Shown here piece by piece: positions 6,851 to 64,000 of a stretch of DNA of 64,000 nucleotides (position 1 is its first letter; each line of letters opens with the position of its first letter). Made by a program: the position numbers and the translations under genes. The stretch spans positions 113,832,001 through 113,896,000 of the forward strand of contig NC_082706.1 of the NCBI RefSeq assembly GCF_030144855.1, written 5' to 3'. This DNA comes from Hypanus sabinus (lineage: Eukaryota). A model generated the notes under the pieces. That model was not told where the DNA came from and ran no database searches. It saw only the letters and a list, made by a program, of their open reading frames with translations.

Positions 6851-7266
6851 GAATGATATTCATTCAGTCCTACCTCTGCCATTTAGTAATCTTCCCCTGG
6901 AACTTTCTTTTAATGACAATGAAGTCAGTCACAGGTTTTCTCTTTCTGTTTTTACTTTTTATTGCCTCAACCTCATGTATTGTCAATTCTCCTATTTCCC
7001 CATTGCATCCTTGAGCCATTTACTCATGCTTGCCATAACCCTTTCCCTTCTCCCCTCTCTGCTTTCTGTTAGTCCTCCTATCTGTGCTTATTCCTTCCTT
7101 GGACATCAATTCATTCCAACCCTCTCCCTTTCATTTATTTATCTCTTCTATTTTTCCATGTTCTTTCTGCTGTTTTTCACTAAATTTAACTAATTTTCAT
7201 TCATTCCTTCACTCTTGTTTGATATAGTTATGCTCAGTAATCTATTTGATGCTTTCCTCTGAACAG

Positions 7267-7351
7267 TATCACTGTGAAGGATCTAAAGACCATGCTTCCT
7301 CAAGTCAACTATAGAGTTCCAAATATGCGGTTCCTGAGAGACAAGTTGTTG
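7267..7351 (+). CDS. PLCG1-like: PLC-gamma exon (~exon 5, 85 nt): [30 protein letters not shown]-hand region
   Basis: Boundaries aacag|t and ttg|gtaagt; matches PLCG1 [27 protein letters not shown]. Confidence 0.95.
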
Positions 7352-10300: not shown

Positions 10301-13300
10301 GATCACATTGCACTATTTGAGGACAGGAGGCAGTTTTCCTTGAACGACATTGTTTTCTCAGTCAAACTGACTCTACACTGATTAAGTGTCCATTCATTAA
10401 GTATTTTTATGTGAGTTATTGCGTGCAAGTTGTTTGATGTAACACCTCCCATATTTCAGATGTAGTTCTTTTTTGGGATATCTTGAGGATATGATAAGCT
10501 ATTAACATAAACAAAGGCCTTTCATTTATTCTTTATGCCATTCTGACATTATGTCAGCTTGCCATTGGATAATGGTTGCCAAGATATTATGCATTACTCC
10601 AGTTCCCTTGTGGCAGAAAGAACCATGTAAATCTCCCAGTATGAACATTCTATTGTAATCTCTGATCATTCCCATTGTTTTAGCTTCCTTGCCATAATGC
10701 ACATGAAACCCATGATGCCTGTACCATTTCTCCTCACTGCTATATACTCTTCTTACGAGAGAGAGTGCAAACTCCGTAGTTTGTCGTTCAACCTTCTCCT
10801 CCCAATTTAAGACAATGACACAAAAACACTTCTCAAATCCAACGAATCCATTTTATAGATTTTGCCATGTAGGAAATAGAAGTTGGGCATAGAATGGCCA
10901 TAACTGCTACTGAATGCTGACAAAACATTGAAACCTTATCAGCAATGTAAAGTAAATTCTATACTTCCACAAGGCAATTTGAGGAAATTGGATTCCAGTG
11001 TGTCACTGCTGATGGCACCAGGTTTTGAGATGTGTTCGTTGTGTTATTGTTTTAACATAACTTGAGAAGAAAAAGTTGAAAGAACAGACGCCGATTTGAA
11101 TAGAGCTGAGTTCATACTGTCTCCTACAGTATCTCTAGATTTGTTTTTAACTGCAGAGGAGAAGAAGAAAGCAAGAACAAGAGTGGGGCCATTCAAACTT
11201 TTAAGTGTGCTGTGCTATTCAGTATTATATCATTATTACTGATTAACCATTTCATTAATCCACTCTTATTCTTTCCCTTGATGCCTTCTGTAGAAGTTTA
11301 TTCAGGTTCTTCTTAAAAATATTCAGAAACTTGTTCTCTACAGCTTCAACGGTGGTGAATTCCATGGATTCACCATTTTCTTAGGGAAGAGTTTTAACCG
11401 GATGTCAGCCCTAGATCCTTTGCCCCAAGACAATCACTTATTGTTCCAAACTCTGCAGTCAGGGTAAACATCTTTTTCACATCCAGTCTGCCGAAATCTG
11501 TCAGAATTTTGTAAGTTTCATTCTTTTAAGCTGTATTGAATGCAAACTTTCCTCTGGTCAAGTTAATCTCTCCTCATATGGTTGTCCTGCCTCTCAGGAA
11601 TCTTCACTGTACTCCTTTCTTAGGTGAGAGGATTGAAGCTACACACAGTGTGGTCTCATTATCACTTGGTAAAGCTAAGTGAACTCTTGGTGGAGTGAGG
11701 CAGTCTCACTCTCTGGTGAAGGTACCTTATCAGAGTTCATGAAAGGTGGCTTGAAATTGGGATGTGTGGTGGGAGTAACAAAATTATAGATAGGGGTACA
11801 AATAGGGTGAATCCGTTCTGGATTTTCTCCCATCAGCTTGGGTGAGAGTAGAACTAGGAGGCCATAATTTTAGAGTAAATATTGGAAGGTCCAAGGGGAA
11901 TCTGAGGAGAAATGTCTTCATTCAGAGGCTGGTGCAAATGTATAACAAGCTGCCCACATAAGTGGTGGATATGGGGTCAATGATTACACTTACTGTAAGA
12001 GTACATGGATGAGGGAGATTTGGAAGGATATTGTCGGGTGCAGGTAGATGGGACTAGGCAGATGAGCTGAAGGGTCAGCGTCTGTGCTGTATTACACTAT
12101 GATCTGATAACAGCTGTTCAGATTGGAGATGGTACGCAGTGCACACGCTGTGCTCTGATGGCAGAGAGAGTGAACTTTCGGGACGGTGGATGGGGTACCA
12201 GTCACGTGGGCTGCTTTATCCTGAATGCTGTGACTGGCTTCTGGGTAAGGTTTAATGTCTATGAATTCCAGACTGAGGTGGATGGAAACAAGGTCACTCT
12301 GAAGGTTGTTGGTTGGATCTTTCATCTCATTCATCAATAAACTATCTTTGCTGAAGCCAAATTGCTAACTATTTCCAGTATGAGACAGTGAAACATAAAA
12401 AACTTTTTTATACTTCTAAAAAGTCACAGCAAGCTGAAGGGCTTGTTCTTTAGGGAACTGAAGGTTATTGTAACACATGCAAACAGCTCAAATTCTCTGG
12501 CTCGCCGTGAATCCAGTACATTTGAAACTCTGGGAATATCATGTGCAGAACATAATTGCATGAGAATCAATAATATGGATTGTAATGATACAGTGATACC
12601 CTGAAGCATTTGCTGTATAAGATCTGGGATCAGTAATTTTTAAAAAGATTTTATCTTCAGATTTAATAAAATGAGAGCATCCATGAAGAGGCATTTTGTA
12701 CTTGGCCTGCAGGCAAAGATCAAATTGGATGAGCTAAATTATTTGCAGCTCTTTCCAGTAATCTTTAAGCACAATGGTGCCTCTGCTGGTGAATATGAGA
12801 CAGGCTGTAGATTCATAGTACTTGTTCTTTGTTCATCTTCCTGACAGGAACTGGACACGAGGATGGATATAAACTATGCACACTTTGTTCAATTCTACAG
12901 AAACCTGATGTTTGATGCACAAAAATCAGTGAGTATTTACTTGAAAAGTTGGATCAACTGCAAAATTGATGTACTGATCAATGAATATGAAATTTACTAT
13001 ACTGCATGCAGTTTCTTCTTTATAAAATAATTACATAACTATTTTACTACAATACATATTCACTCTATTGTTTTCTATCATTATATGCAGTTCGGTATCC
13101 TCTACAATAAACAATCCAATAATCCTTGATCTGTTGACAATCTTTATTTTCTTTTAACAAAGCAATTTCCCTACTACACATTTTGCTCCTATTACCTATG
13201 GTAAATCTTGGGCCCATTGTTTTCTATAATTTGGGAAGTGAGTTGCAATGTTAAATATGGCTATTTAATTTGGTGGACATTAATGCACCATTGAAACAGT

Positions 13301-16300
13301 CTATTTCATATTAAGATTTACTTTTCTATCTTAATTTTTAGACAATTATATAGTTTAGCTTTTTCTTTCCTGGCTTGTTGTGTGTGAGTAATTCGTACAG
13401 TATTTGTCAACTTGGTGATATTCCAACTGCAGGATGCCAAAAATCATAATGAGCTGGTGTTTGACAGTGACCAATGCCAGAGAGGATAAGAGCACACAAG
13501 AGCGATCAGCAGCAAGTGCTGTTAGCATCACTTGACTCTCTCATCTGAAATTCTGTGCCTCCAATTTCTATTGATGTTGAGTGACCTACCCTGCAGGCCA
13601 TAAGGAAACACCAGAAGCTCAGACTGATGTCATCTTTTGTTTTTGCACGGCTGCTGATGTGTGGGATCACTTTCCACTTCTGCAAGCCCAGACTCCTGCC
13701 CTGTTGAAGGTTGAAGTAGGTTAATCAGCTCTCCCCAGCTGGTAACTTCTTCAGAATGCCAGTTTGACAATGTAGCCTACTAGCTGCATGTACAGTAAAT
13801 GAAATTGGGCCTTTAGGGGAAATTAATCAATTAACTAAGTAGGGAGATATGTGATAAATTTATTTCTATGAAGCTGAAGTTACCCATTTGGACCCAAAAA
13901 AGATATGTCTGGGTTCTTCTTAGATGATGAAATCCATAAGAATGGGATCCAAAAGAGACTTGGGTTCCAAACCAGATGGATTATTAAGATACCTTAGGCA
14001 ATTAAACAAAATGATCACTAATGTTACTGAAAGCTGGAGGACTAGGACATAAGGATAAAAACTAATGTCACCACTGTACAAGGCTATAGTTAGTTATGTA
14101 AGTACTTCTAGACACTGCAAAAAGGATGTATATATTTGCTTTGGAAGCAATGCAGCACAGAATGTTTATTGATTGTTGAGATACTTCATATAATCAAACC
14201 CTGGCTTGATTACATCACTTTTTGTAAATATTCTACGTGAAGATTTGGCAAGATATCTGAAACTTTGACAAACTTCTGTAGCTGTGTTGTTGAGAGTATA
14301 TTAACTGGTTGCATCGCAGCCTGGTATGGAAACACCAGTGCCCTTGTTTGGAAAATCCTACAAAGAGGTAGTGGATGCATCTTATTCCATTACAGGTAAA
14401 GCCTTCCCCGTCATTGAACACATCTAATCAGAGTGTTGTCGCAGGAAAGCAGTATCCATGATTGAGGGCTCCCGCCACCCAGGTCGTGCCCCCTTCTTGA
14501 CGCTGCCGTCACAAAGAAGGTACAGGAGCCTCAGAACCCAGACCACCAGGTTCAGAAATAGTTTTTACCCCTAAACAATCAGGCCCTTGAACCAGTGGGG
14601 ATAACTTCACTCAACTTAACTCACCCCATCATTGAACTGTTCCCACAACCTATGGACTCACTTTGAAGGACACTTTATCTCATGTTCTTGATACTTATTG
14701 CTTAGTTATTATTATGATTATTATTGTTTTTATTATTATTGTTTTCTCTCACTCTGTATTTGCACCATTTGTTGTCTTTTGTACATTGGCTATTTGTCTT
14801 TTTTGTTGGGTGTGGTCTTTCATTGATTCAATCATGTTTGTTGGATTTACTGTGTATGTCCACAGGAAAACAAATCCCTGGGTTGAATTTAGTATCGTAT
14901 ATGTAATTCAATAATAAATTCACTTTGAACTTTTGAGAGTTTTATCTACTTGTAGGTGACTCCAGAAAAGGAGGTTATATAGAATGTCAAAGACAAGTCT
15001 TTTTGGAATGAGGTTATGAAACCATTTGCCAGACAGACATTTCTGCAAAAAATGTTAACTGTTATTTCAAAACTATGACTGAATCATTCCTGTTAAACAG
15101 AGTTATTGAAGAAACAGAAAAAACGATGGCGATGTGGAATTAAGTCACAGAGCAGGCATTAGTTTATTGAATAGTGGAAGAAGTCGGAGAGACTAAATAG
15201 CCCATTTCTGTCCCAGAGTTCCTTAAAATGACTTGACTTTAGAGCTGCAATAAACAATTGTTAGCAGATACATTCTGATCCCCACTGAATTCTTATGGTG
15301 TCAGTACCTTGTGGCTAGTTTTCTGAATAAAGTTGACTGCAACTTCAGCGACAAGATCCTGTCTGTGGCTGGGGGTTCAGCGATGTAAATCAGCTACTTG
15401 GTAGTGTAGGTGGACTTGGGGAGAGGGTGGTTGGTGAAGGGCACAATGAGAACAAATCTCAAACATGATAATGCCAAGAAAGGACTCGCTAGCTTGGCTG
15501 ACTTTCAAAGCTATCAAAACGCTAAATGTTTAGCAAATAAAATAGAAAATGTTGGAAATACTCAGCAAGTCATGCAGCATCTGGGGAGAGAGAAGCTGAA
15601 TTTAAATAACTGACCTTTCAGAAATCTCTGAACTTTTGAAAGATATTTTAATTATTATTTTTCAATAAGCATAAATGATTTCAAAGTACTTGAAAATTAA
15701 GTATTTTTTGGAAAATATTTAAATTTTAATTGCTTTAAAAGTAAATTGAAGCCACCAAAACATATTAACTAAAGGTTACCTTTGCCCTTTGTAGCTCTTC
15801 CTCTTAGATCCTACCTTGGTCTGATTGGTTACACAAGCTCCCAGTATAAGTGGTGAAGTATTGCCACAACTTTGTATTCAAGTGGTGCAGCACACGTGAG
15901 AACATACTGGTGAATTGCTGCCAAAATTTGAGATTTATAAGTTTGTACATATCTTTATTGATCACCCCTGGTTATCCATTGTTTGCACAAATCCATAGAG
16001 TTATATCAATTAAATTCTCCCAGAAGTTCAGTAGTTAATAAGTCATGGCTTGATTACATCACACTTATTTCTAAATACCTGTTGTTTTGTTTTTGGTGTA
16101 CAGGTAATTGAGCAGCTGGAGCTGTCTTTTCCTCTAAGGTAAGGAAATATTCATTGATTTATCCTGAGTTTTTTTCAATTTTCACTTTCTACTTTTACTC
16201 CATGTAAAAATAAATTTATTTTAAAAAATGACAAACTAATTCTCATTTTCTTAAGCCTAGAATGAAATTAGATATGATCAGTCATCCTTGTGTTTTATTA

Positions 16301-52300: not shown

Positions 52301-55300
52301 AGATCAAGAAAGGGGAGAGAAGTGTCCGAGATGGACCAAGTGAATTTGAGGGCTGGGTGAACGTTAGAGGCAAAGTCAATGAAATTCACAAGCTCAGCAT
52401 GGGTGCAGGAAGCAGCACCAATGTAGCCGTCAATGTATCGAAGGAAAAGTTGGGGAGTAGTACCAGTATAGATTTGGAGCATAGACTGTTCCACATAACC
52501 CACGAAGAGGCAGGCATAGCTGGGGCCCATGCAAGTGCCCGTAGCTACACCCTTGATCTGGAGAAAGTGGGGAGAGCCGAAAGAGAAGTTATTAAGTGTG
52601 AGTACCAGTTCCGCCAACCTGAGGAGTGTGGTTGTGTTGGGGAACTGGTGAGGTCTATTGTCCAGAAAGTAGCAGAGGGCTTTGAGGCCTTCTGGATGGG
52701 GAATTGAAGTGTATAAGGATTGGACATCCATTGTGAAAATGAAGCGGTCGGGACCAGGGAACTGGATGTTATTGAAGAGGTGGAGGGCATGGGATATATC
52801 CTGGATGTAGGTAGGGAGTGACTCAATTATGGGTGACAAAATGGGAGTCGAGGTAGGCAGATACAAGTTTGGTGGGGCAGGAGCAGGCTGAAACTATAGG
52901 CCTACCAGGACAGTCAGGCTTATAGATCTCAGGGAGGAGGTAAAAGCGAGCAATGCAGGTTTTGGGAATTATGAGTTTTTTCATTGAGAATGGAAGGTCT
53001 CTGGAGTTGATAAGGGCAGTGATGGTACGGGAGACCATCATTGTAGTTGCTTTCATCTTGGAGATACTGCCAAGGTGAATATTTATTGGCTCTAATGTTG
53101 CGCAGTAAATGTAATGGTGGGCATTCATGAACTGCTGAAAAACTTTGTGGTGAGGTGCTCCTTCAATAGCTTTAGACTAGCAGTTACCTGTTTTTAACCC
53201 ACAAACAGTGAAAGATGAGTGATGTACAGTGTGTTCAAATTGGGCTGTTGTATGAACTGGAAAAAGGACTTGGTGTACTAAAATATCCATGGGCCTGCCC
53301 TCTGAGATATGAAGACCACAGGTTCCAGAAACCAAAAAAAGAAACTACAGAACCCAAAGTGTGAAAATGTGGGGATACATGTTGATTGAGAAGAGAGTGC
53401 TTTGTGATATAGGATCATAATTCTAAGGATAAATTGTTCTTTTAGGTGGTACCATGCCAACTTAACGCGGTTACAGGCTGAGCACATGTTAATGAGAGTG
53501 CCACGGGATGGAGCCTTCCTGGTCCGAATGAGGAACGAGCCCACCTCTTACGCTATATCATTCCGGTGAGTGATGATGAATTTTATGTCTGAATTAATAC
53601 TTTTACAAGCTACACAGATTTTATTTTAGAGACTTTATACAGATGAAATGGTCGATCATTCCGGCAGTATGGAAAGAGTTCCTGCATAAGTTGACCATGA
53701 ATATAAGCAAACGACAAAATTTTCTGTCTTTTGAAGGATCATAATATGTTCACTTGGGTGATCTATTTCAAATCTAAGTCTACTAGTACGAATTTTGTTT
53801 CATTGACAAAGGGAAAATAGTCCTGAATTAGGAGTAATGATACATATGGTTAGCTAGGCCAATGATTGATCTGAGGAGAGGGAAAATATTCATCCAGAAT
53901 TGGTTCAGAGTAGCTTGCTGCCTGCCTTTGTTTACCTCCTGTAAACCCTGTTCTTACCTGAGCAATTCCTTGGATGAGCAGTTCATCAAGGAAGTAGTGC
54001 TAATTTGAAAAACCAGGACCTTTCAGTTGTAAATCCTAAGTGTATGAATGGGATTGCTGAACAAGTGCTTGTTGTAAGCTTCAGGTCAAGTTTCCCATTG
54101 GGAAATTATAGAGGTTTGTGCTTCACTGCTAAATGTCCACTCCAATGTCAGAGCACGACAAGCTTAGCAGGGGCAGACGGCCACATTGATACTTGGGTCT
54201 TCTGCATTCAGCCATACTCCTGCACAGTTATGGATGTGAACACTTTTTGTAAAGTTATAGGCCATTATAAAACCCCACTAGGTGGAACACCTCTGAGCTT
54301 GAAGTACACCTGAATAAAAATGCTTCAGCCCCAATAATAAAATCATAAGAACATAAGAAGTAGGAGAAGGAGTAGGCCATCCAGCCCATCAAGACTGCCC
54401 TGCCATTCAATAAGGTCATGGCTGATCTGTCTGTAAACTCAGCTCCATCTACCTGCCTTTTCCCCATAACCCTTAATTCCCCTACTATGTAAAAACCTAT
54501 CTAACTGTTTCTTAAATATATTTAGTGAAGAAGCCTCAACTGCTTCCCTGGGCAGAGAATTCCACAGATTCACCACTCTCTGGGAAAAACAGTTTCTCCT
54601 CATCTCCGTCCTAATCTTCTTCCCTGAATCTTGAGGCAATGTCCCCTAGTTCTAGTCTCACCTACCAATGGAAACAACTTTCCTACTTCTATCATATCTA
54701 TACCTTCCAAAACTTTGTATGTTTCTATAAGATCCCCTCTCATTCTTCTGAACTCCAGAGAGTATAGTCCCAGGAGACTCAATCTCTCCTCACAGGTTAA
54801 CCCCTTCATACCAGGAATCAACTGGTGAACCTCCTCTGCACTGCCTCCAAAGCCAGTGTATCCTTCCTCAAGTATGGAAACCAGAACTGCACACAATACT
54901 CCAGGTGCGGCCTCACCAGTACCCTGTATAGTTGCAGCATGAATTCAATCCCTCTAGCAATGAAGGCAAACATTTTGTTAAGATTCTTAATAACCTGTTG
55001 TACCTGCAAGCCAACTTTTTGCGATTCATGCACAAGCACTCCCAAGTCCCTCTGCACAACAGCATGCTGCAATCTTTCACCATTTAAATAATTACCTGCT
55101 CTTCTATTATTCCCTCCAAAGTACATCATCTCACATTTACCAATGTTGTATACCATCTGCTAGACCTTGGGCCATTCACTTAACCTATCTATATCCCTCT
55201 GCAGACTCTCCACATCCTCTGTACAATTTGCTTTTCCACTCAGTTTAGTGTCATCAGCAAATTTTGCTACGCTACACTCAGTCTCCTCTTCCAAGTCGTC

Positions 55301-58300
55301 AGTATAAATGGTAAACAGCTGCGGACCCAGCACCAACCCCTGGGGCACCCCACTCACCACTGACTGCCAGCTGGAGAAACAAACATTTATACCAACTCTC
55401 TGCCTTCTATCGGTTAACCAATCCACTATCCATGCCAATACACTTCCTCCGACTCCATGCATCTGTGTCTTATTTAGAAGTCTCTTGTTTGGCACCTTAT
55501 CGAATGCCTTCTGGAAATCCATGTATACGACATCCACCTGTTCCCCTCTATGCATTGCACTCACTATGTCCTCAAAGAACTCCAGTAAGTTTGTCAAACA
55601 GGACCTGCCCTTTCTGAATCCATGCTGATCCTTCATCTTGAGCAGAAAGTTCACTGAATACATGTAGAATTATTCAAAAATGTTTTTTAAGTTAATCTTG
55701 TGAGTTGTGAGATCCATATTTCTCTTGTCATTAGTCACGCTTATCATGTACCTAATCAATGAAAATAGTTTCTAAGGTTATTTATTGGACCCATCTGCTT
55801 TGTGATTTCCAGGGCAGAGGGAAAAATTAAACACTGCCGTATCCAGCAGGAGGGACGCCTTTTCATGCTGGGAAGCTCTGCAGAATTTGAGAGCCTGGTT
55901 GACTTGGTGAATTATTATGAAAAGCACTCTCTGTACCGGAAAATGAAACTGCGATATCCAATCAATGAGGAAACGTTGGAGAAGATGGGCACAACAGTAA
56001 GTCTGGAAAATGAGCAATATATTCCTTTATTTTTCCTTTTTTACTTGCTTTCCTGCTGCTGTTTGGTACTGGGCTACATTTTCTCATTCTGTGTGAAGAA
56101 TGGGGCCAAGCAACCTTCAGTCAGATGACTAGCTACTGATTAGAGCAGCAGAGAAGTGCCTTTAGTGTTTAAGGACTTGCCATGCAAAAACTTTTAACCC
56201 TCTTGTTGTAACTTGTGTTGTGAACAGTAATATACACACACATTCATGTGAATATGCACATATTCTAAATACCTAAACTCAAAAAAAAAACAAGCTGTCA
56301 TATCAGATTGCCCATATCCCATGGAGAAAATGAGAAAGGTCTCCTTAGCAGGTTAGCTACACTGTTCAACAGACAAAAGATTTTTAATCTTATGCAAGTA
56401 TATGGGAACATTGGGATACACTGGAGAGCACATGTGGAGCGGAGCAAGTAATGTTGTAAATCTGAGAGTATTATCGACGTCTTGAGATGACCTGACTCAC
56501 CATTGGGAGACAGGAATATTTTCATGAACGTGGGCAGATTTACTACTTTATGTTATTTAACATCCTCCCTAAGAAACAGGAGACTGTCGGTAAAAGGCCA
56601 CAAGGTTGCTAGCTTAATAAATGAAATGAGAACAAATAGCTGGGTGAGTTTTCAACAAGGCAATTTTGTACCCTATTTTTCTTGTTTGTTAATGTTTTTC
56701 CTGAGAGGAACAGTGGCAAGAAAATAACAAGAATTCATCTTATTTAGACAAAACAGGACTGGGGTCAATTAGCCTATCAGCTGCTTATGATCAAGATGAA
56801 GATAAAAAGAAGTATTAATGAAAAATGAATTAGGACAAACTCAGTCTTATGTTGTTGCTCTTCTTGCAGTGGACATTTACTTTACAGTCTATTTTTCTTG
56901 GCAACAAACAATCTTCTGAATGAACTCAGCGGGTCTGTGGGATGAATGGAATTGTACGTTTCGAGTCAAAACGCTGCATCAGCATTCCTTTCCTCCCACA
57001 GATGCTGCTCGATCTGCTGAGTCCCTCCAACGGATTGTTTGTTGTGCCAGATTCCAGCCTCCACAGTCTCTTGAGTCTCCAGCTGTTCTCCTACTGACTA
57101 CGATTTAATTTTTTTCCAGGAACTGGACTATGGAGCCTTGTACGAAATGCGGACACCTCATTTTTATGTTGAAGCAAATAAGATGCCTACAGCAAGGGTA
57201 AGATAAAGTCTTAGTCTGCAGGGTTGGATGATAATGGGAGAATTTTCCTTTCAGTATTAGAGTCAGGCTGGATCCTTTCATTCTTAGTTGTGAGCGATAA
57301 TTTGAAATGAGCCTGCTGACATCTTAATTAAGTTCCTTGTATGCAGAGGCAAATGGACACTGAAATGGTAGCTTTACTCAGACTATAGGGTGTCCAATGT
57401 GGGAAATGCAAAATGTACATTTGTTAGTACCTTTCTAATGTTGTTTAAGACACTTGTTGGGGGAGGTAAGAGAACTTTATCCTTTTGCTAAGCCCTTGCA
57501 TCGCTGGCAGACATTTAAATGTACTCCCATCTCAGTAGATGTTTTGCATTTTGTTTGGGTATAGGCCCTGACAACCTGTCATCAGGGAGCTGGTTCTCTT
57601 CACTGATCCCTGCCACAGGCTAAAGAGTTTAATATGATTAGCCACCCCCTACAGTTTATACAGAAGCCTTAATGCCAGATTGAAAAATTAAAGGGTGTCA
57701 TTTACACCTCTCCATTGATGCTGCCTGATCTGCTGGGTTCCCTCAGCATTTTGTGTTTCAAGCGAAAATGCGAGATTGCTTGATCCTGGTTTCTATGTGA
57801 GTATATAGTTCAGTTCAATGAAGCTTAATATTTCCTTCCTTCTAGTGCACAGTTAAAGCTCTGTACGACTACAAAGCCCAGCGGGAGGATGAGTTGTCCT
57901 TCTGCAAGCAGGCCATTATTCACAATGTCGACAAGCAGGAAGGTGGATGGTGAGTTTGCTGATTTTCTACTTGAAATAGATTTTTGTTTTTTCAATTTGG
58001 ATGTGATGCCAGCTCATATTGCTAATGACAATAAGGAAGCAGAGTAGAATATTGCTAAAGAAGATCGATCATAACAAACTTTGAAAAGCAGATGTGGGAA
58101 ATTTAAATCATGTGAATGGGCAGAGAAGAAAGAAGGGGAATGGGGGGCTGGGAGGGGCAGAGGCTGACAGCTGGGAAAATGGAAACTGAGGAGATGTGGA
58201 GCATTACAGACTGAGGCCCCAGTGTAAGATCCTGACAGGTGGGAATTTAATTATGAACTGAAGGACCGGTGGTTGGGAATTGAGAGTAAAAGACTGAAGG

Positions 58301-61300: not shown

Positions 61301-64000
61301 GTGTTCTATAGGGCTTAGTGTTGGGACTACATTTTTTCACATTATATGTCAATGATTTAGAAGACAGAATTGGCATTCAATATAATGATATGTGGAGGGG
61401 CAGGTAGTGTTGAGGAAAAGGGGAGTCTGCAGATGGACTTAGATTAGGAGAATGGACAAAGAAGTGGCAGATGGAAGATAGTATATGAAATGTACAGTCA
61501 TGTACTTTGGTGGAAGGAATAAAGATGTAGACTATTTTCTAAATGGTGAGAAAATTCAAACATCAGAGGTGTAGAAGGACCTTGGGAGTCCTTGTGAAGG
61601 ATTCACTAAAGGTTAACGTATAAGTTGGGCCAGTAGTAAGGAAGCCAAATGCAGTGTTAGCATTCATTTTGAAAAAGCTAGAATATAAGAGCAAGGGTGT
61701 GATGTTGAGGCTCTATAAGGCATTCACCAGACCACACTTGGAGCATTGTGAACAGTTCTGGACCCCTTAACTAAGAAAAGATGCATGGCATTAGAGATGG
61801 TCCTGAGGAACTTCATGAGAAATATTCCAGTAATGAAAGGGTTAACGTGTGATTAGCGTTTTATGGCTCTGTGTGTGTACTCACTGGAGTTTAGAGGAGT
61901 GAGGGGAGATCGCTTTGAAAATCTCATACATTGAAAGGCCTAGATAGAGTGGACGTGGAGAGGATAATTCCTATAGTGGGTGAGTCTAGGACAATAGGGC
62001 GTGACCTCAGAATAGAGGGACATCAATTTAGAACGGGGATGAGGAGGAAATTTGAATCTGTGGAGGCAAAGTCATCGAGTATAATTAAAGAGGAGGTTAG
62101 TAGGTTCTTGATTAGTCGGAGCGACAAAGGTTACAGATAGAAGGCAGGAGAATGGTGTGAGAGGGATAATAAATCAGCCATGATGGAATGGCAGAGCAGA
62201 CTCGATCAGCTGAGTGGCCTAATTCTATTCCTTTGTTTTGTGGTCTCATGAACGTTTACTGGACTGTGCATTCTCGAGCATGTACGTGCACATTTGACTA
62301 GGTATCTGTGTGTGTGCGTGTCTGTATAAGTATCAACTGAACTCACTGAAACATTTCAAAATAATGTAGTGATTCAAACTAAAACTAATAATGAGCTATA
62401 TCTATAATTTATTAATCCTTCTAAGTCAGGTTTTAATCTGATGGTTTGATATTTAAGAGGGTTGCGGATGAACCACTGGTGATATATTTCTGTATCAGTA
62501 TTGTGTGGGTGGGTGGGTGGAGTGGAGAGGGGTCGAGGCGCTATCAGAGTAGCTTGGAACATGATGCCATTTCTGTAGAAGGTACTCACCACAGCCACTG
62601 GTGGTGAGATGGAATGAATGTTTATGGCAGTTGATGATGTGGCCTGCTTTGTTTTTGAGGATGTTGAGTTTCCTGAGTATTGTTACTCATTGGACCAACA
62701 TAAAAACTTAAGAAAATTCGAGCAGGAGTTAGGCCACTCAGTTTCTCATATGTGCCCCAGCATTCAATATAATTGTGGCAGATTTCATATAGACCTCATC
62801 TCCCCTTTACCAAGATGCTGAATGGCATGGAATGTTTCACTTATGAGGAGACACTGCAGAGGATAAGTTTGTTTTCTCTTGACCATTGGAGGTTAAGGGG
62901 TAACATAAATGAGGTGTATAAAACTCTGAGAGCTATAGGTAGTGTAGACTAAAAAAAAATTCCCCATACTGGAGACAGATAGAACTAGAAGATTTAGGAT
63001 AAGGGTGTAGAAGATTCAGAGGAGATCCAAGGGTTTAATCCAGAGTGGTGAGTGCTTGAAGTCCACTGCCTAGGAGGGTGGTAAAAAGAAACACGAGGCA
63101 TCTGGATAAACACCTGAATCACTTAAGCATAGAAGGTTATGGGCCAAGTGCGAGAAGATGGAATAAATCAGAAATGGGTACCCACTCAACAGTGTGGACA
63201 TGGTGAGCCAGGGGGCCCTTTTCTATGCTGTTTAACTCTGTAACTGTACTGTATCATTTCCCTAGAGCCATAAAATTCCTAGTCTTTTTATAAAAAATGT
63301 TCTTTCTCTTTAAGTACTCACATTGATCTGCCTGCTCAACCCTCTTGGGTAGAGATTATTCTATCACAGTCCTGACTTTTGCCATGAGGTTGGCAGAATC
63401 TCCTATGGTATATAAAGCCTTGAACACTACTTAATTATTTCTTTTTTCTGTATTTGTTTGTAATTTACAGTTTTTTTAATGTCTTTGAAACCTGTTCCTT
63501 TGGTGCTATTTGTAACTCCAATCACTGGAGTGCTTTGCCTTCAATCCCCATTGATTTCAGTTTTACCAGCCAATCTGTTACACACATTTGGACAATTGCT
63601 TTGATGCCAAGGGTAGTCACTCTTAATTTACTCCTTGAATTCAATTTCATGGTTCATGTCTGGACTGAAGTTGTCATGTGGTCCTGTCAAACTCATTCTA
63701 GTGCATCAGTGAATAAGTAGGTATTGGCCCATTGACACACTGTCGTCTCCCCACTGATGAGTGAAGGCAGACTGACTGGATACTGAATAGCTGGTTTGAA
63801 TTTATCGTGATAGTGACGGAGCAGAACTGAACAAAAAGACCAAGAAAACAAAGAAGCTAATAAAATGGAAAGTGTGCTTTCATAGATGGATCTCTTCTTA
63901 AATACTGTTGGTCTTCTTTTCCTCATCATGAATATTTTCTCCAAACTCACAATCAGGTGGCGAGGGGATTATGGAGGCAAAAAGCAGCTGTGGTTTCCAG
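7267..64000 (+). CDS. PLCG1-like: Phospholipase C gamma (1-phosphatidylinositol 4,5-bisphosphate phosphodiesterase gamma-1-like); partial spliced gene, 18 exons in window, open at both ends
   Basis: The 18 GT-AG exons join in one open frame. Motifs seen: [39 protein letters not shown] (X box), two FLVR SH2 motifs, [15 protein letters not shown] and GGWWRGDYGG (SH3). Exon sizes and phases match the PLCG1 pattern as recalled. Confidence 0.97.
7814..8260 (-). mobile_element. CR1 LINE 3' fragment nested in an older CR1 (~7742-8570)
   Basis: ORF 7943-8305 reads [29 protein letters not shown]...[12 protein letters not shown]; cataagatatagg tail. Confidence 0.85.
8615..9875 (+). mobile_element. Rex1/Babar-clade LINE, 5'-truncated and degenerate
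   Basis: [31 protein letters not shown] and [30 protein letters not shown] are typical of the Rex1/Babar RT and C-terminus. Confidence 0.85.
10030..10210. mobile_element. Palindromic MITE-like element built from two inverted PLE termini
   Basis: Left arm aaaatgctggaggaaccagcaggtcaggcagcatc...gagtcga is the reverse complement of right arm ttgactc...gatgatgtctgatctgctgttcctccagcacttg. Confidence 0.75.
11185..11660 (-). mobile_element. Old CR1 LINE fragment
   Basis: gaattccatggattcaccattttc and other CR1 3' motifs in reverse orientation. Confidence 0.55.
11770..12100 (+). mobile_element. CR1 LINE 3' fragment
   Basis: agaactaggaggccataattttagagt...gtacatggatgaggg...tctgtgctgtattacactatga. Confidence 0.65.
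12848..12928 (+). CDS. PLCG1-like: PLC-gamma exon (~exon 6, 81 nt): [27 protein letters not shown]
   Basis: Boundaries gacag|gaa and tca|gtgagt; phase 0/0; similar to PLCG1 DITYGQFAQLYRSLMYSAQK. Confidence 0.92.
14232..14932 (+). mobile_element. Rex1/Babar-clade LINE 3' fragment
   Basis: aacttctgtagctgtgttgttgagagtatattaactggttgcatcgcagcctggtatggaaac encodes (F)[19 protein letters not shown]; ends ataataaattcactttgaacttt. Confidence 0.8.
16104..16138 (+). CDS. PLCG1-like: PLC-gamma micro-exon (~exon 7, 35 nt): [11 protein letters not shown](R)
   Basis: Boundaries tacag|gta and aag|gtaagg. A 35-nt exon restores the frame between the phase-0 and phase-2 neighbours, and a T-rich tract lies upstream. 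Confidence 0.88.
16824..16896 (+). CDS. PLCG1-like: PLC-gamma exon (~exon 8, 73 nt): [24 protein letters not shown]
   Basis: Boundaries cacag|g and aag|gtaagc; ERPELC motif shared with PLCG1. Confidence 0.95.
16940..17145 (+). mobile_element. CR1 LINE 3' end
   Basis: [24 protein letters not shown] followed by the tail ctgttctatgttctg. Confidence 0.7.
18454..18555 (+). CDS. PLCG1-like: PLC-gamma exon (~exon 9, 102 nt): [34 protein letters not shown]
   Basis: Boundaries cttag|gaa and gag|gtagat; DPLRE...LDE motif. Confidence 0.94.
19418..20140 (-). repeat. Unclassified interspersed repeat with a Rex/Babar-like 3' tail
   Basis: 19420-19560 resembles 50745-50860 (gtcattcaa...cagggccaaagtgcaaaacacagt). 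The body is not recognised. Confidence 0.45.
21361..22602 (+). mobile_element. CR1 LINE, 5'-truncated (RT C-half and 3' UTR)
   Basis: [19 protein letters not shown] and KYADET motifs; ORF 21713-22345 [19 protein letters not shown]...[17 protein letters not shown]; tail (atggttat)n. Confidence 0.95.
22728..22856 (-). mobile_element. Old PLE terminal fragment with partial hammerhead core (CUGAUGA retained)
   Basis: gtagatgctggac...aaaatgctgaaaattcacagcagttcagccagca...cttcatcagt. Confidence 0.6.
22900..23598 (-). mobile_element. Penelope-like element 3' part (GIY-YIG C-terminus and terminus); left arm of an inverted pair
   Basis: ORF 23231-23461 [37 protein letters not shown]...[24 protein letters not shown] is homologous to the PLE at 51030-53040. 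Confidence 0.9.
23599..24450 (+). mobile_element. Penelope-like element 3' part (Zn finger, GIY-YIG and terminus); right arm of an inverted pair
   Basis: [33 protein letters not shown]; ends with the same terminus as 22900-23000 in opposite orientation. Confidence 0.9.
24788..24906 (+). CDS. PLCG1-like: PLC-gamma exon (~exon 10, 119 nt): [39 protein letters not shown](T), start of X box
   Basis: Boundaries tttag|ttc and ac|gttaag; includes the catalytic His of SSHNT. Confidence 0.97.
26078..26163 (+). CDS. PLCG1-like: PLC-gamma exon (~exon 11, 86 nt): [28 protein letters not shown](L)
   Basis: Boundaries tccag|g and c|gtaaac; essentially identical to the PLCG1 X box. Confidence 0.98.
27032..27152 (+). 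CDS. PLCG1-like: PLC-gamma exon (~exon 12, 121 nt): [39 protein letters not shown](E)
   Basis: Boundaries tgcag|tg and ga|gtaagt; second catalytic His (YHGHT). Confidence 0.98.
28370..28538 (+). CDS. PLCG1-like: PLC-gamma exon (~exon 13, 169 nt): [56 protein letters not shown]
   Basis: Boundaries tccag|g and aag|gtagtt; end of X box. Confidence 0.98.
28655..32300 (-). mobile_element. Older, long CR1 LINE (endonuclease to 3' end), interrupted by a younger CR1 at ~30542-31648
   Basis: Minus-strand fragments [34 protein letters not shown] and [14 protein letters not shown]; CR1 homology resumes after about 31650. Confidence 0.85.
30542..31648 (-). mobile_element. Younger CR1 LINE nested in a CR1
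   Basis: Tail (ccataaga)n at 30542; ORF 30748-31167 [24 protein letters not shown]...[12 protein letters not shown]; [12 protein letters not shown]. Confidence 0.93.
32553..32760 (-). mobile_element. tRNA-derived SINE with intact Pol III boxes
   Basis: On the minus strand: A box TGGTGTAGTGG (32742-32752), B box GGTTCGAATCC (32698-32708), and a (CAA)n-like tail. Confidence 0.85.
33197..33440 (-). mobile_element. CR1 LINE 3' end
   Basis: cataagacac...ccccaatgacttggcctcc...tgtggcaatgaattcc; homologous to 30545-30800. Confidence 0.8.
33730..34840 (+). mobile_element. Degenerate CR1 LINE RT region
   Basis: [28 protein letters not shown] and other RT remnants. Confidence 0.8.
34950..35610 (+). 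mobile_element. Very old CR1 LINE 3' fragment
   Basis: tttctaaatggtga...caaagttttcaaggtattaagagg...aaatggcctattcct. Confidence 0.55.
35779..35898 (+). CDS. PLCG1-like: PLC-gamma exon (~exon 14, 120 nt): [40 protein letters not shown]
   Basis: Boundaries taaag|cac (AAG acceptor) and cat|gtgagt; [20 protein letters not shown] as in PLCG1; start of split PH. Confidence 0.96.
36678..36872 (-). mobile_element. V-SINE-like fragment, 5'-truncated, ending about 40 nt upstream of the exon 15 acceptor
   Basis: V-domain gtatgtctttaagaatgtgggaggaaactggagcac; tail gctttatttgtcacatgtacattgaaa. Confidence 0.7.
36914..37021 (+). CDS. PLCG1-like: PLC-gamma exon (~exon 15, 108 nt): [36 protein letters not shown]
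   Basis: Boundaries tgcag|aat and gag|gtttgc; N-terminal half of split PH. Confidence 0.96.
37322..39320 (-). mobile_element. CR1 LINE (~2 kb, RT and 3' end) inserted in an older + strand CR1 (~37262-39760)
   Basis: ORF 38205-38966 [16 protein letters not shown]...[14 protein letters not shown]...YMDFSKAFD...VPQGSVLG; ORFs 37898-38182 and 37320-37700. Both flanks show + strand CR1 RT sequence. Confidence 0.95.
40257..43579 (-). mobile_element. Tc1-family DNA transposon with IR/DR termini (~210-bp TIRs) and TA target duplication; transposase pseudogene interrupted by a CR1
   Basis: Ends TA|CAGTGGCATGCAAAAGTTTGGGCACCCC and GGGGTGCCCAGGCTTTTGCATGCCTCTG|TA. Inner DRs at ~40446-40463 and ~43368-43388. 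Transposase pieces: MGSSKQLP...[40 protein letters not shown]. Confidence 0.96.
41073..42750 (-). mobile_element. CR1 LINE inserted in the Tc1 transposase ORF
   Basis: ORF 41858-42442 [22 protein letters not shown]...YMDFSKAFD...KFADDTK; tail tagaaccatagacc at the left junction. Confidence 0.95.
43931..44118 (+). CDS. PLCG1-like: PLC-gamma exon (~exon 16, 188 nt): nSH2 first half, [62 protein letters not shown](W)
   Basis: Boundaries atcag|gaa and tg|gtaggt; FLVRES motif. Confidence 0.98.
44240..44814 (+). mobile_element. Rex1/Babar-clade LINE 3' fragment, same family as 8615-9875
   Basis: gtcaaaactgccc...acccatcctgctcatggactg...aagcagtaaggctgatcaac shared with 9430-9640; tail tcttgaatcttgaa. 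Confidence 0.8.
45477..45770. mobile_element. Mariner-type non-autonomous element (MITE) with an internally repeated TIR and a damaged right end
   Basis: TA|TGAGGGGTGATTGATAAGTTCATGGCCTATGGTAGAAGG, repeated at ~45636-45673; partial inverted copy (ccttcta/tcaat) at ~45760-45770. Confidence 0.6.
46335..48197 (+). mobile_element. CR1 LINE with ORF1 esterase remnant, APE endonuclease remnant, a large internal deletion and RT C-terminus
   Basis: gtggtgattggggattagttagttagg (VVIGD*LVR, GDSL-like); [11 protein letters not shown]; [11 protein letters not shown]; ORF 47612-47794 jumps from ELKVKEPLG to [20 protein letters not shown]. Confidence 0.85.
48198..49973 (+). mobile_element. L1-clade LINE, 5'-truncated ORF2 C-terminal half with 3' UTR and poly(A) signal
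   Basis: [31 protein letters not shown], cysteine-rich [20 protein letters not shown]; AATAAA at 49950 and an A-rich end. Confidence 0.93.
50321..50521 (+). CDS. PLCG1-like: PLC-gamma exon (~exon 17, 201 nt): nSH2 second half, [66 protein letters not shown](E)
   Basis: Boundaries tacag|g and ga|gtgagt. Confidence 0.98.
50745..50960 (-). repeat. Interspersed repeat 3' end with a Rex/Babar-like tail
   Basis: Similar to 19420-19560. Confidence 0.45.
51030..53040 (-). mobile_element. Penelope-like retroelement (RT and GIY-YIG endonuclease), 5'-truncated and frameshifted
   Basis: [101 protein letters not shown]. Confidence 0.96.
51126..51161 (-). ncRNA. Minimal type I hammerhead ribozyme motif in the PLE terminus
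   Basis: Minus-strand RNA AGUC-CUGACGA-AGGGUUUUGACUU-GAAAC-GUU-GACU: helix I AGUC/GACU, both core boxes intact, palindromic AACGUU in place of helix III. Confidence 0.8.
53446..53565 (+). CDS. PLCG1-like: PLC-gamma exon (~exon 18, 120 nt): cSH2 first half, [39 protein letters not shown](R)
   Basis: Boundaries tttag|g and cg|gtgagt. Confidence 0.98.
54344..55630 (-). mobile_element. CR1 LINE, 5'-truncated (RT to 3' end)
   Basis: ORF 55160-55663 [19 protein letters not shown]...[10 protein letters not shown]...KFADDTK; tail (cataagaa)n. Confidence 0.95.
55813..55996 (+). CDS. PLCG1-like: PLC-gamma exon (~exon 19, 184 nt): cSH2 second half, [61 protein letters not shown]
   Basis: Boundaries tccag|g and aca|gtaagt. 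Confidence 0.98.
56901..57080. mobile_element. Palindromic PLE-terminus element with a central hammerhead-like motif (56956-56982, minus strand)
   Basis: caacaaacaatc...actcagcgggtc...tgtggga is inverted to tcccacag...gatctgctgagt...gattgtttgttg. The centre reads CUGAUGC-AGCGUUUUGACUC-GAAAC-GUA on the minus strand. Confidence 0.75.
57120..57197 (+). CDS. PLCG1-like: PLC-gamma exon (~exon 20, 78 nt): cSH2-SH3 linker [26 protein letters not shown]
   Basis: Boundaries tccag|gaa and agg|gtaaga; the three tyrosines correspond to PLCG1 Y771/Y775/Y783. Confidence 0.96.
57698..57760 (+). mobile_element. Short PLE terminal fragment
   Basis: ccattgatgctgcctgatctgctgggttccctcagcattttgtgt. Confidence 0.65.
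57846..57949 (+). CDS. PLCG1-like: PLC-gamma exon (~exon 21, 104 nt): SH3 [34 protein letters not shown](W)
   Basis: Boundaries tctag|tgc and tg|gtgagt; ALYDY SH3 motif. Confidence 0.98.
59030..62250 (+). mobile_element. Long degenerate CR1 LINE (endonuclease, RT, 3' UTR) carrying a SINE insertion
   Basis: [33 protein letters not shown]...[35 protein letters not shown]. Confidence 0.92.
59824..60102 (-). mobile_element. V-SINE-like tRNA-derived SINE inserted in a CR1
   Basis: Minus-strand A box TAATGTAGTGG, B box AGTTCAATTCC, V-domain ctccggatgctccagtttcctcccacagtccaaagatgtac. Confidence 0.8.
62815..63242 (+). mobile_element. Old CR1 LINE 3' fragment
   Basis: cacttatgaggagacactgcagaggataagtttgttttctctt...tatgctgtttaactctg. 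Confidence 0.7.
63957..64000 (+). CDS. PLCG1-like: PLC-gamma exon (~exon 22, cut by window end): SH3 [14 protein letters not shown]
   Basis: Acceptor atcag|g; matches PLCG1 [15 protein letters not shown]. Confidence 0.97.
   Translation, partial: MARGLWRQKAAVVS

What the first reader, a model, noticed from the sequence alone, without database searches (positions are those of the whole stretch)
7267..64000. The PLC-gamma looks like a third vertebrate paralog, neither canonical PLCG1 nor PLCG2
Seen: an intact frame with both catalytic histidines. Compared with the recalled human proteins, it carries PLCG1-type segments ([26 protein letters not shown], GKLGxGRDGR, [15 protein letters not shown]...FYVEAN) and PLCG2-type residues (LMFxxQKS, NKVRE, LHFxEKW, [22 protein letters not shown], HYRE, LTDPVPxPN, the one-residue-longer [18 protein letters not shown]). 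The segment [12 protein letters not shown] matches neither. Inference: an ohnolog kept in non-mammalian vertebrates and lost in mammals, usually labelled 'gamma-1-like' and functionally little studied. Caveat: the shared residues may simply be ancestral states.
Basis: partly seen in the sequence, partly recalled or inferred. Interest (0 to 1): 0.7.

Follow-up and report, generated by a model that had tools for sequence, protein, structure and literature searches.

The report
Third PLC-gamma paralog in a stingray
The window holds the middle 18 exons of an intact stingray gene for a third phospholipase C-gamma. This ancient sister of PLCG1 is kept from sharks to birds, was not found in mammals, is labelled only 'gamma-1-like' in databases, and appears unstudied.

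Summary

- **Gene model.** The + strand carries 18 exons (7267 to 64000), all with AG..GT borders. They splice into a stop-free 672-aa peptide covering the EF-hands, the X-box with both catalytic His, nSH2, cSH2 and most of SH3.
- **Identity.** The peptide is 100% identical to RefSeq 'gamma-1-like' proteins of two dasyatid rays, Hemitrygon akajei and Hypanus sabinus. It is about 76-78% identical to true PLCG1 and 53% to an invertebrate PLC-gamma. On raw tblastn pieces it is nearer to PLCG1 than to a PLCG2-type protein.
- **Tree.** An ML tree gives two separate jawed-vertebrate clades. PLCG1 (100/100) includes human and the ray's own second gene. 'PLCG1-like' (99/98) includes the window, sharks, coelacanth, lungfish, amphibians, reptiles, birds and ray-finned fishes. 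No mammal was found in it.
- **AU tests.** Placing the window inside PLCG1 is rejected (p about 1e-89). A cartilaginous-fish-only duplication is rejected (p = 0.002).
- **Synteny in relatives.** Sparrow has TOP1-PLCG1-ZHX3. The like-gene sits beside EEF1D or NAPRT and a CYLD-like gene in gar, fugu, lizard and starling.
- **Mosaic residues.** The 'PLCG2-type' residues are mostly retained ancestral states.
- **Prior knowledge.** The gene is annotated (chicken symbol PLCG1L), but I found no paper describing it.

Interest is moderate.

The parts
7267..7351 (+). Exon (85 nt, enters in codon phase 2), EF-hand 1 region; first exon of the gene inside the window
   Evidence: AG at 7265-7266 and GT at 7352; identical to P0270 residues about 171-199
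12848..12928 (+). Exon (81 nt), EF-hand region, ...LMFDAQKS
16104..16138 (+). 35-nt mini-exon encoding [12 protein letters not shown], the signature of the PLCG1-like clade
   Evidence: The same 35-nt exon occurs in starling, gar and lizard; the homologous sparrow PLCG1 exon is 23 nt. The peptide is invariant apart from V/I across the like clade and 4 residues shorter in PLCG1
16824..16896 (+). Exon (73 nt), EF-hand 2, NMERPELC...
18454..18555 (+). Exon (102 nt), EF-hand 2
24788..24906 (+). Exon (119 nt), start of the catalytic X-box; first catalytic His codon at 24899-24901
   Evidence: PF00388 match covers the whole profile, 224 bits
26078..26163 (+). Exon (86 nt), X-box
27032..27152 (+). 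Exon (121 nt), X-box; second catalytic His codon at 27079-27081
28370..28538 (+). Exon (169 nt), end of the X-box
35779..35898 (+). Exon (120 nt), X-Y linker and N-terminal half of the split PH domain ([20 protein letters not shown])
36914..37021 (+). Exon (108 nt), split PH N-half and acidic linker
43931..44118 (+). Exon (188 nt), nSH2; phosphotyrosine-binding Arg of FLVRES at 44075-44077
   Evidence: 104 bits to PLCG1 chains against 78 to PLCG2 chains in the PDB
50321..50521 (+). Exon (201 nt), second half of nSH2
53446..53565 (+). Exon (120 nt), cSH2; Arg of FLVRMR at 53525-53527
55813..55996 (+). Exon (184 nt), cSH2; [10 protein letters not shown], which lacks the 1-residue deletion of PLCG1
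57120..57197 (+). Exon (78 nt), cSH2-SH3 linker with the three regulatory tyrosines (57129-31, 57141-43, 57165-67), equivalent to Y771/Y775/Y783 of PLCG1
57846..57949 (+). Exon (104 nt), SH3
63957..64000 (+). Exon cut by the window end, SH3 ([14 protein letters not shown])

Best explanation
The window carries the central part (residues about 171-843 of about 1300) of an intact, annotated stingray gene for a third jawed-vertebrate PLC-gamma, here called PLCG1-like or PLCG1L. It is the sister paralog of PLCG1. The two arose by a duplication before the split of cartilaginous and bony vertebrates, and after the PLCG2 line (and, on this tree, the hagfish gene) had branched off. The second vertebrate genome duplication is the likeliest source. 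PLCG1L is retained in elasmobranchs, coelacanth, lungfish, amphibians, reptiles, birds and ray-finned fishes, was not found in mammals, and evolves more slowly than PLCG1. Inferred mechanism, as for PLC-gamma-1: a PIP2-hydrolysing X/Y catalytic core is held inactive by the split-PH/nSH2/cSH2/SH3 array. The nSH2 docks on phosphotyrosine partners. Phosphorylation of the Tyr equivalent to Y783 lets cSH2 bind it and releases the active site. Shown here: gene structure, intact frame, conserved catalytic and regulatory residues, phylogeny, and synteny in relatives. Inferred: enzyme activity, regulation, expression and the genome-duplication origin.
For: - Gene model: 18 exons with AG..GT borders and a 672-codon open frame.
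- Identity: 100% to Hemitrygon akajei XP_072904691.1 (P0270) residues 170-843 and to the Hypanus sabinus protein. 95-96% to shark, sawfish and skate like-proteins, about 89-90% to bird, salamander and lungfish like-proteins, and 76-78% to PLCG1 of ray, shark and human.
- Careful ML tree (LG+C20+F+G4, 44 rows, 1305 columns): PLCG1 100/100, like-clade 99/98, the two together 98/98, each repeating the species tree.
- AU tests reject the window inside PLCG1 (p = 1e-89) and a chondrichthyan-only duplication (p = 0.0017).
- A true PLCG1 exists in the same ray species on another chromosome.
- Synteny: NAPRT-L in fugu, EEF1D-L-CYLD-like in gar, L-CYLD-like in lizard and starling, against TOP1-PLCG1-ZHX3 in sparrow.
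- Rare changes: the 35-nt mini-exon against 23 nt in PLCG1; a 1-residue deletion only in PLCG1; an RDG insertion shared only by PLCG1 and the like clade.
- Slower evolution: ray to bird is 85.9% for the like gene and 78.1% for PLCG1.
- Canonical PLC-gamma Pfam layout, with both His, both SH2 Arg and three Tyr conserved.
Against: - With only the 674 columns the window covers, monophyly of the like clade is weak (SH-aLRT 51.5). Exclusion of the window from PLCG1 stays at 99.9.
- The outgroup sample is thin: PLCG2 is represented by two partial, long-branched proteins (frog, carp), cyclostomes by hagfish only, and there is no lamprey.
- Synteny could not be read at this locus.
- The human map positions used for the genome-duplication argument (EEF1D, NAPRT, TOP1MT, MAFA on 8q24.3) are recalled, not tested.
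- Absence in mammals rests on one capped word-based search.
Confidence: 0.88

Rival explanations
1. It is simply the PLCG1 ortholog of a slowly evolving cartilaginous fish, and the PLCG2-like residues are ancestral states.
For: It is nearer to PLCG1 than to PLCG2: 104 against 78 bits for the nSH2 exon. Many of the odd residues are indeed ancestral.
Against: The same ray species have a separate 'gamma-1' protein on another chromosome that groups with human PLCG1. The AU test rejects this placement at p = 1e-89. The window also lacks the PLCG1 deletion and the 23-nt mini-exon.
Confidence: 0.02
2. It is a lineage-specific duplicate of PLCG1 made within cartilaginous fishes.
For: Both copies are labelled 'gamma-1(-like)' in sharks and rays.
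Against: Orthologs with the same signature mini-exon and conserved neighbours exist in gar, lizard and bird. The AU test rejects a clade made of all chondrichthyan copies, with delta lnL 460 and p = 0.0017.
Confidence: 0.01
3. It is an ancient paralog, but it arose by a local or segmental duplication in the jawed-vertebrate stem rather than by the second genome duplication.
For: The tree dates the split only to before the chondrichthyan/osteichthyan divergence and after the hagfish branch. No paralogon-wide analysis was done here.
Against: The two genes are on different chromosomes in rays. In sparrow PLCG1 is on a 15.4-Mb chromosome and in starling the like gene is on a 150-Mb one. From recalled human maps, the neighbours belong to paralogous families: TOP1/TOP1MT, ZHX3/ZHX1-2 and MAFB/MAFA on 20q12 and 8q24.
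Confidence: 0.08
4. It is a decaying or non-functional copy.
For: None beyond the lack of expression data.
Against: The frame is open over 18 exons with all splice sites canonical. Identity is 100% between two ray genera and 86% between ray and bird, higher than for PLCG1. The catalytic and regulatory residues are kept.
Confidence: 0.01

Closest known systems
PLCG1 (phospholipase C gamma 1; rat and human structures 6PBC, 7Z3J)
   Same: Same domain order: PH, EF-hands, X, split PH, nSH2, cSH2, SH3, Y, C2. Both catalytic His are present. The SH2 FLVR arginines sit at the same numbers (586, 694). The tyrosines equivalent to Y771, Y775 and Y783 are kept, and the RDG insertion in nSH2 is shared. 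Identity is about 71-72% over the full length within one species, and 76-78% over the window part.
   Different: It forms a separate clade with a different chromosome and neighbours. The EF-hand mini-exon is 35 nt against 23 nt. It has no 1-residue deletion in cSH2. It evolves more slowly. No mammalian member was found.
PLCG2 (human structures 8JQG, 8T7C)
   Same: Same architecture. It shares several residues that PLCG1 has changed, such as GSSAEF-type length, [12 protein letters not shown] and IIHNV.
   Different: The relationship is much more distant: nSH2 scores 78 against 104 bits. PLCG2-type proteins branch outside hagfish + PLCG1 + like clade. PLCG2 lacks the RDG insertion and the DYGALYE..FYVEAN linker.
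RefSeq '1-phosphatidylinositol 4,5-bisphosphate phosphodiesterase gamma-1-like' / chicken PLCG1L
   Same: This is the same gene. The window peptide is 100% identical to XP_072904691.1. The chicken symbol PLCG1L is listed as an annotated gene in PMC10591418.
   Different: That paper treats PLCG1L as 'chicken lineage-specific'. Here it is shown to be shared by sharks, rays, lobe-finned and ray-finned fishes, amphibians and reptiles.

Membership tests
PLC-gamma (any isozyme) | PI-PLC X-box with the two catalytic histidines | tested here: met
   PF00388 matched over profile positions 1-144 of 144, 224 bits. His codons at 24899-24901 and 27079-27081.
PLC-gamma (any isozyme) | nSH2-cSH2-SH3 array inserted after the X-box | tested here: met
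   Two SH2 stretches and SH3_1 in the window peptide. Both FLVR arginines are present.
PLC-gamma (any isozyme) | Y-box, C2 and N-terminal PH domain | not testable with these tools
   These parts lie outside the window. They are present in the full-length protein P0270, which is identical over the shared 674 residues.
PLCG1 orthogroup | Groups with human PLCG1 in a gene tree | tested here: not met
   The PLCG1 clade at 100/100 excludes the window. AU p = 1e-89.
PLCG1 orthogroup | TOP1 and ZHX3 as neighbours | tested here: inconclusive
   Not readable at this locus, where the gene spans 252 kb and has no neighbour within 10 kb. Orthologs in gar, fugu, lizard and starling have other neighbours. 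Sparrow PLCG1 has TOP1 and ZHX3.
PLCG1 orthogroup | Clade signatures: 23-nt EF-hand mini-exon and the 1-residue deletion in cSH2 (GNS-EF) | tested here: not met
   The window has the 35-nt exon and the undeleted GSSAEF.
PLCG2 orthogroup | Groups with PLCG2 in a gene tree | tested here: not met
   The PLCG2-type frog and carp proteins, identified through the PDB, branch outside PLCG1 + like clade + hagfish.
PLCG1-like (PLCG1L) clade | Groups with the bird, reptile, amphibian and fish 'gamma-1-like' proteins | tested here: met
   Support 99/98 with full-length rows, but only 51.5 SH-aLRT with the window columns alone.
PLCG1-like (PLCG1L) clade | 35-nt mini-exon encoding [VI][11 protein letters not shown] | tested here: met
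   Window 16104-16138. The same exon is found in starling, gar and lizard.
PLCG1-like (PLCG1L) clade | EEF1D/NAPRT and CYLD-like neighbours | not testable with these tools
   The window lies wholly inside the gene, and the ray locus was returned without DNA or neighbours.

The most novel reading that the evidence does not exclude
Jawed vertebrates ancestrally had three PLC-gamma isozymes. The third, PLCG1L, is a product of the second genome duplication and sits in the region that corresponds to human 8q24.3. It is under tighter constraint than PLC-gamma-1 and was lost only on the mammalian stem, possibly together with a neighbouring CYLD-like gene. If so, PLC-gamma work in zebrafish, Xenopus and chicken has an unrecognised third player, and mammals are the exception rather than the rule.
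Probability: 0.6. Interest if true: 0.55.

Novelty: new member of a known kind. Interest (0 to 1): 0.45.

Why it matters
Textbooks and reviews count two PLC-gamma isozymes. This analysis shows a third one that is older than the shark/bony-fish split, is present in the non-mammalian jawed-vertebrate groups sampled (elasmobranchs, coelacanth, lungfish, amphibians, reptiles, birds, ray-finned fishes), and is better conserved than PLC-gamma-1. It keeps every catalytic and regulatory residue checked.

That matters for reading loss-of-function work on plcg1 and plcg2 in fish, frog and chicken, where a third isozyme could compensate. It also matters for orthology tables, because the 'gamma-1' and 'gamma-1-like' labels are mixed across species. 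And it adds a clean case to the study of which duplicated genes mammals lost.

It does not open a new kind of biology. The gene is already in RefSeq, and the mechanism is expected to be that of PLC-gamma-1.

Tried and rejected
- **Spliced peptide as a query.** It could not be passed to the database tools. I used one exon to reach full-length representatives and then full-length protein ids.
- **AU test.** The treekit AU test under the mixture model did not finish in about 490 s. A 44-taxon LG+F+G4 run timed out. I replaced both with iqtree2 -fast, LG+G4, 25 taxa.
- **Neighbour look-ups.** The look-up of encoding contigs gave no DNA or neighbours for the two ray genes, whose ranges are 252 kb and 192 kb. 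It had no record for P0210, P0205 and P0319.
- **Other tools.** The protein-atlas search gave only generic PLC clusters and no taxon range. An Rfam scan of the whole window found nothing at gathering score.
- **Literature.** Six paper searches for a third PLC-gamma, PLCG1L, PLCG3, plcg1a/b or 'gamma-1-like' found no study of this paralog. The only trace is the chicken symbol in a gene list.
- **Not obtained.** A PLCG2 from a cartilaginous fish, or any lamprey PLC-gamma.
- **P0002.** I first took it for a close relative of the window. It is a rattlesnake fragment, and the nSH2 exon is simply very conserved.

Full report
**What is in the window**

I used the stingray protein P0270 as guide. For each intron I chose the GT/AG pair that gave the best alignment. 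This yields 18 exons: 7267-7351, 12848-12928, 16104-16138, 16824-16896, 18454-18555, 24788-24906, 26078-26163, 27032-27152, 28370-28538, 35779-35898, 36914-37021, 43931-44118, 50321-50521, 53446-53565, 55813-55996, 57120-57197, 57846-57949 and 63957-64000. Every exon is bounded by AG and GT.

The splice is 2018 nt, or 672 codons without a stop. The gene runs off the 3' end of the window inside the SH3 domain. Its first roughly 170 codons lie upstream of the window, since tblastn at E<=10 finds nothing before 7262.

Pfam finds EF-hand 2 of PLCG, a complete PI-PLC X-box (224 bits), two SH2 domains and an SH3 domain. These residues are in place:
- the two catalytic histidines (24899-24901, 27079-27081);
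- the FLVR arginines of both SH2 domains (44075-77, 53525-27);
- the three linker tyrosines equivalent to Y771, Y775 and Y783 of PLC-gamma-1 (57129-31, 57141-43, 57165-67).

The introns hold decayed retroelements.

**Whose gene it is**

The spliced peptide is 100% identical, 674 of 674 residues, to residues 170-843 of P0270. P0270 is XP_072904691.1, 'gamma-1-like isoform X1' of the red stingray Hemitrygon akajei. The peptide is equally identical to the Hypanus sabinus protein P0438. The window therefore comes from a dasyatid stingray. This agrees with other notes of this scan that call the genome an elasmobranch. In the H. akajei assembly the gene spans 252 kb.

**Two PLCG1-type genes, not one**

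Identity of the window peptide to other proteins:

| Compared with | Identity |
|---|---|
| 'gamma-1-like' of sawfish, sharks, skate | 95-96% |
| 'gamma-1-like' of coelacanth, salamander, bird, lizard, lungfish | 89-91% |
| 'gamma-1-like' of ray-finned fishes | 80-86% |
| 'gamma-1' of ray, sharks, chimaera, coelacanth, bird, human | 76-78% |
| hagfish PLC-gamma | 63% |
| an invertebrate PLC-gamma | 53% |

Database searches with a shark 'like' protein and with the other shark protein return two disjoint sets.
- The first set holds sharks, rays, coelacanth, lungfish, frogs, salamander, turtles, lizards, snakes, birds, bichir, sturgeons, gar, bowfin and teleosts. It holds no mammal, although the list reaches down to the other paralog at 71% identity.
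- The second set holds sharks, rays, chimaera, coelacanth, caecilian, turtle, birds, bowfin, sturgeon and a long run of mammals including human.

Chiloscyllium, Heterodontus, Leucoraja, Latimeria, Amia, Acipenser and birds appear in both sets. Hemitrygon akajei and Hypanus sabinus each have a separate 'gamma-1' on a different chromosome: 175 Mb against 225 Mb, and 170 Mb against 215 Mb.

**Phylogeny**

I built a careful ML tree with IQ-TREE under LG+C20+F+G4 (PMSF), using 44 rows and 1305 columns. Support is ultrafast bootstrap / SH-aLRT.
- PLCG1: 100/100.
- The 'like' clade with the window: 99/98.
- The two together: 98/98.
- Hagfish as their sister: 89/80.
- The PLCG2-type frog and carp proteins lie outside. 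I identified them as PLCG2 through the PDB (1215 bits to PLCG2 against 892 to PLCG1).

Each of the two clades repeats the species tree, with chondrichthyans against bony vertebrates. A quick tree with more rows places two teleost proteins (Scleropages, Coryphaenoides) in PLCG1 as well, so teleosts have both genes.

AU tests used LG+G4, 25 taxa and 10,000 RELL replicates.
- The ray gene inside PLCG1 is rejected (delta lnL 110, p about 1e-89).
- A duplication confined to cartilaginous fishes is rejected (delta lnL 460, p = 0.0017).

One weakness remains. With only the 674 columns that the window covers, PLCG1 still excludes the window at 99.9, but monophyly of the like clade drops to 51.5 SH-aLRT. 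The like clade keeps many ancestral states, so its unity rests on the full-length data, the rare changes and synteny.

**Rare changes**
The same 35-nt exon, with the same borders, is present in starling, gar and lizard. The homologous exon of sparrow PLCG1 is 23 nt. The peptide [VI][12 protein letters not shown] is invariant from rays to birds and teleosts. The PLCG1 counterpart is four residues shorter and variable.
- PLCG1 alone has a one-residue deletion in cSH2 (GNS-EF against GSSAEF). Hagfish and PLCG2 have the longer form.
- The RDG insertion in nSH2 (GKLGxGRDGR) and the DYGALYE..FYVEAN linker are shared by PLCG1 and the like clade. They are absent from hagfish, PLCG2 and invertebrates, which fits the two being sisters.

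**The mosaic explained**

Within the window part, 13 columns are fixed in each clade but differ between them. In 7 the like-clade state is the one seen in outgroups, in 3 the PLCG1 state is, and 3 are mixed. The stem of PLCG1 is also longer, 0.27 against 0.098. The like gene is more conserved than PLCG1 for every species pair tried, markedly so for most: ray to bird 85.9% against 78.1%, shark to bird 86.2% against 79.6%.

**Synteny**

The window lies inside the gene, and the ray locus is too long to fetch. I therefore read the neighbours in relatives.

| Species | Gene order |
|---|---|
| Sparrow (15.4-Mb chromosome) | TOP1 - PLCG1 - ZHX3 (canonical PLCG1 setting) |
| Fugu | NAPRT (NAPRTase_N + NAPRTase_C, 552 aa) - like gene |
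| Gar | EF-1 beta/delta protein of 732 aa (size of long EEF1D) - like gene - CAP-Gly + UCH (CYLD-type) gene |
| Lizard | like gene - CAP-Gly + UCH gene |
| Starling (near the end of a 150-Mb chromosome) | like gene - CAP-Gly + UCH gene |

From my own knowledge of the human map, not tested here: NAPRT and EEF1D are adjacent on 8q24.3, close to TOP1MT and MAFA, with ZHX1 and ZHX2 on 8q24.1. Their paralogs TOP1, MAFB and ZHX3 flank PLCG1 on 20q12, and MAF lies near PLCG2 on 16q23. That pattern is what two rounds of genome duplication would leave. The tree shape (PLCG2,(hagfish,(PLCG1,like))) fits a PLCG1/like split at the second, jawed-vertebrate round. This step is inference.

**Mechanism**

By homology with the solved rat and human PLC-gamma-1 structures, to which the ray-clade protein aligns over its whole length, the protein should be a PIP2 phosphodiesterase. 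It would be autoinhibited by its SH2-SH2-SH3 array and released by phosphorylation of the Y783-equivalent tyrosine. All residues needed for that are conserved. Activity, partners and expression were not tested.

**What is known**

RefSeq annotates the gene as 'gamma-1-like' in dozens of species. A chicken transcriptome paper lists PLCG1L among annotated 'chicken lineage-specific' genes (PMC10591418), which the present tree contradicts. Six full-text searches found no paper that describes a third PLC-gamma paralog. The library does not cover most subscription journals, so this is not proof of absence.

**Limits**
- No reads or expression data.
- No lamprey and no chondrichthyan PLCG2 in the tree.
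- PLCG2 in this genome was not looked for.
- Absence in mammals rests on one capped search.

**Verdict**

This is a real, intact, already annotated gene. Its status as an ancient third PLC-gamma not found in mammals is well supported here and apparently undescribed. Interest is moderate.

Noticed in passing
window 38205-38966 (-) and 41858-42442 (-): Two intronic ORFs on the minus strand with reverse-transcriptase domains (RVT_1, E about 1e-24). They are decayed non-LTR retroelements inside the 6.9-kb intron between the exons ending at 37021 and starting at 43931.
   Followed up: partly
window 9037-9570 (+) and 49130-49669 (+): Further retroelement remnants in introns. One ORF matches the 'ALKBH8_N' model (E = 1e-8), a region I recall as common in LINE tails. 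The other has a weak zf-RVT match.
   Followed up: partly
window 51126-51161: Another note of this scan (s1-193298) reports a minimal hammerhead ribozyme here, at the end of a Penelope-like element. Rfam finds no family at gathering score anywhere in the window. In 50900-51400 it finds no hammerhead even at E<=1. Minimal split hammerheads may escape these models, so this is not a refutation.
   Followed up: partly
window 51141-52866 (-): Two long overlapping minus-strand ORFs (412 and 392 aa) with no Pfam match, in a G-rich, low-complexity-looking stretch of the intron. Their nature was not determined.
   Followed up: partly
L003:70973-74710, L004:99661-102570, L002:29961-38392: In gar, lizard and starling a CAP-Gly + UCH (CYLD-type) gene sits directly downstream of PLCG1L. 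It may be a CYLD paralog. The chicken paper also lists CHD8L next to PLCG1L among supposedly bird-specific genes. This hints at a block of duplicated genes missing from mammals.
   Followed up: no
P0433 (Myxine) and P0075 (Eptatretus): The hagfish 'gamma-1-like' protein lacks the RDG insertion of nSH2. It branches before the PLCG1/PLCG1L split at 89/80 support. That would date the split to after the cyclostome divergence, if the placement of this long branch holds.
   Followed up: partly
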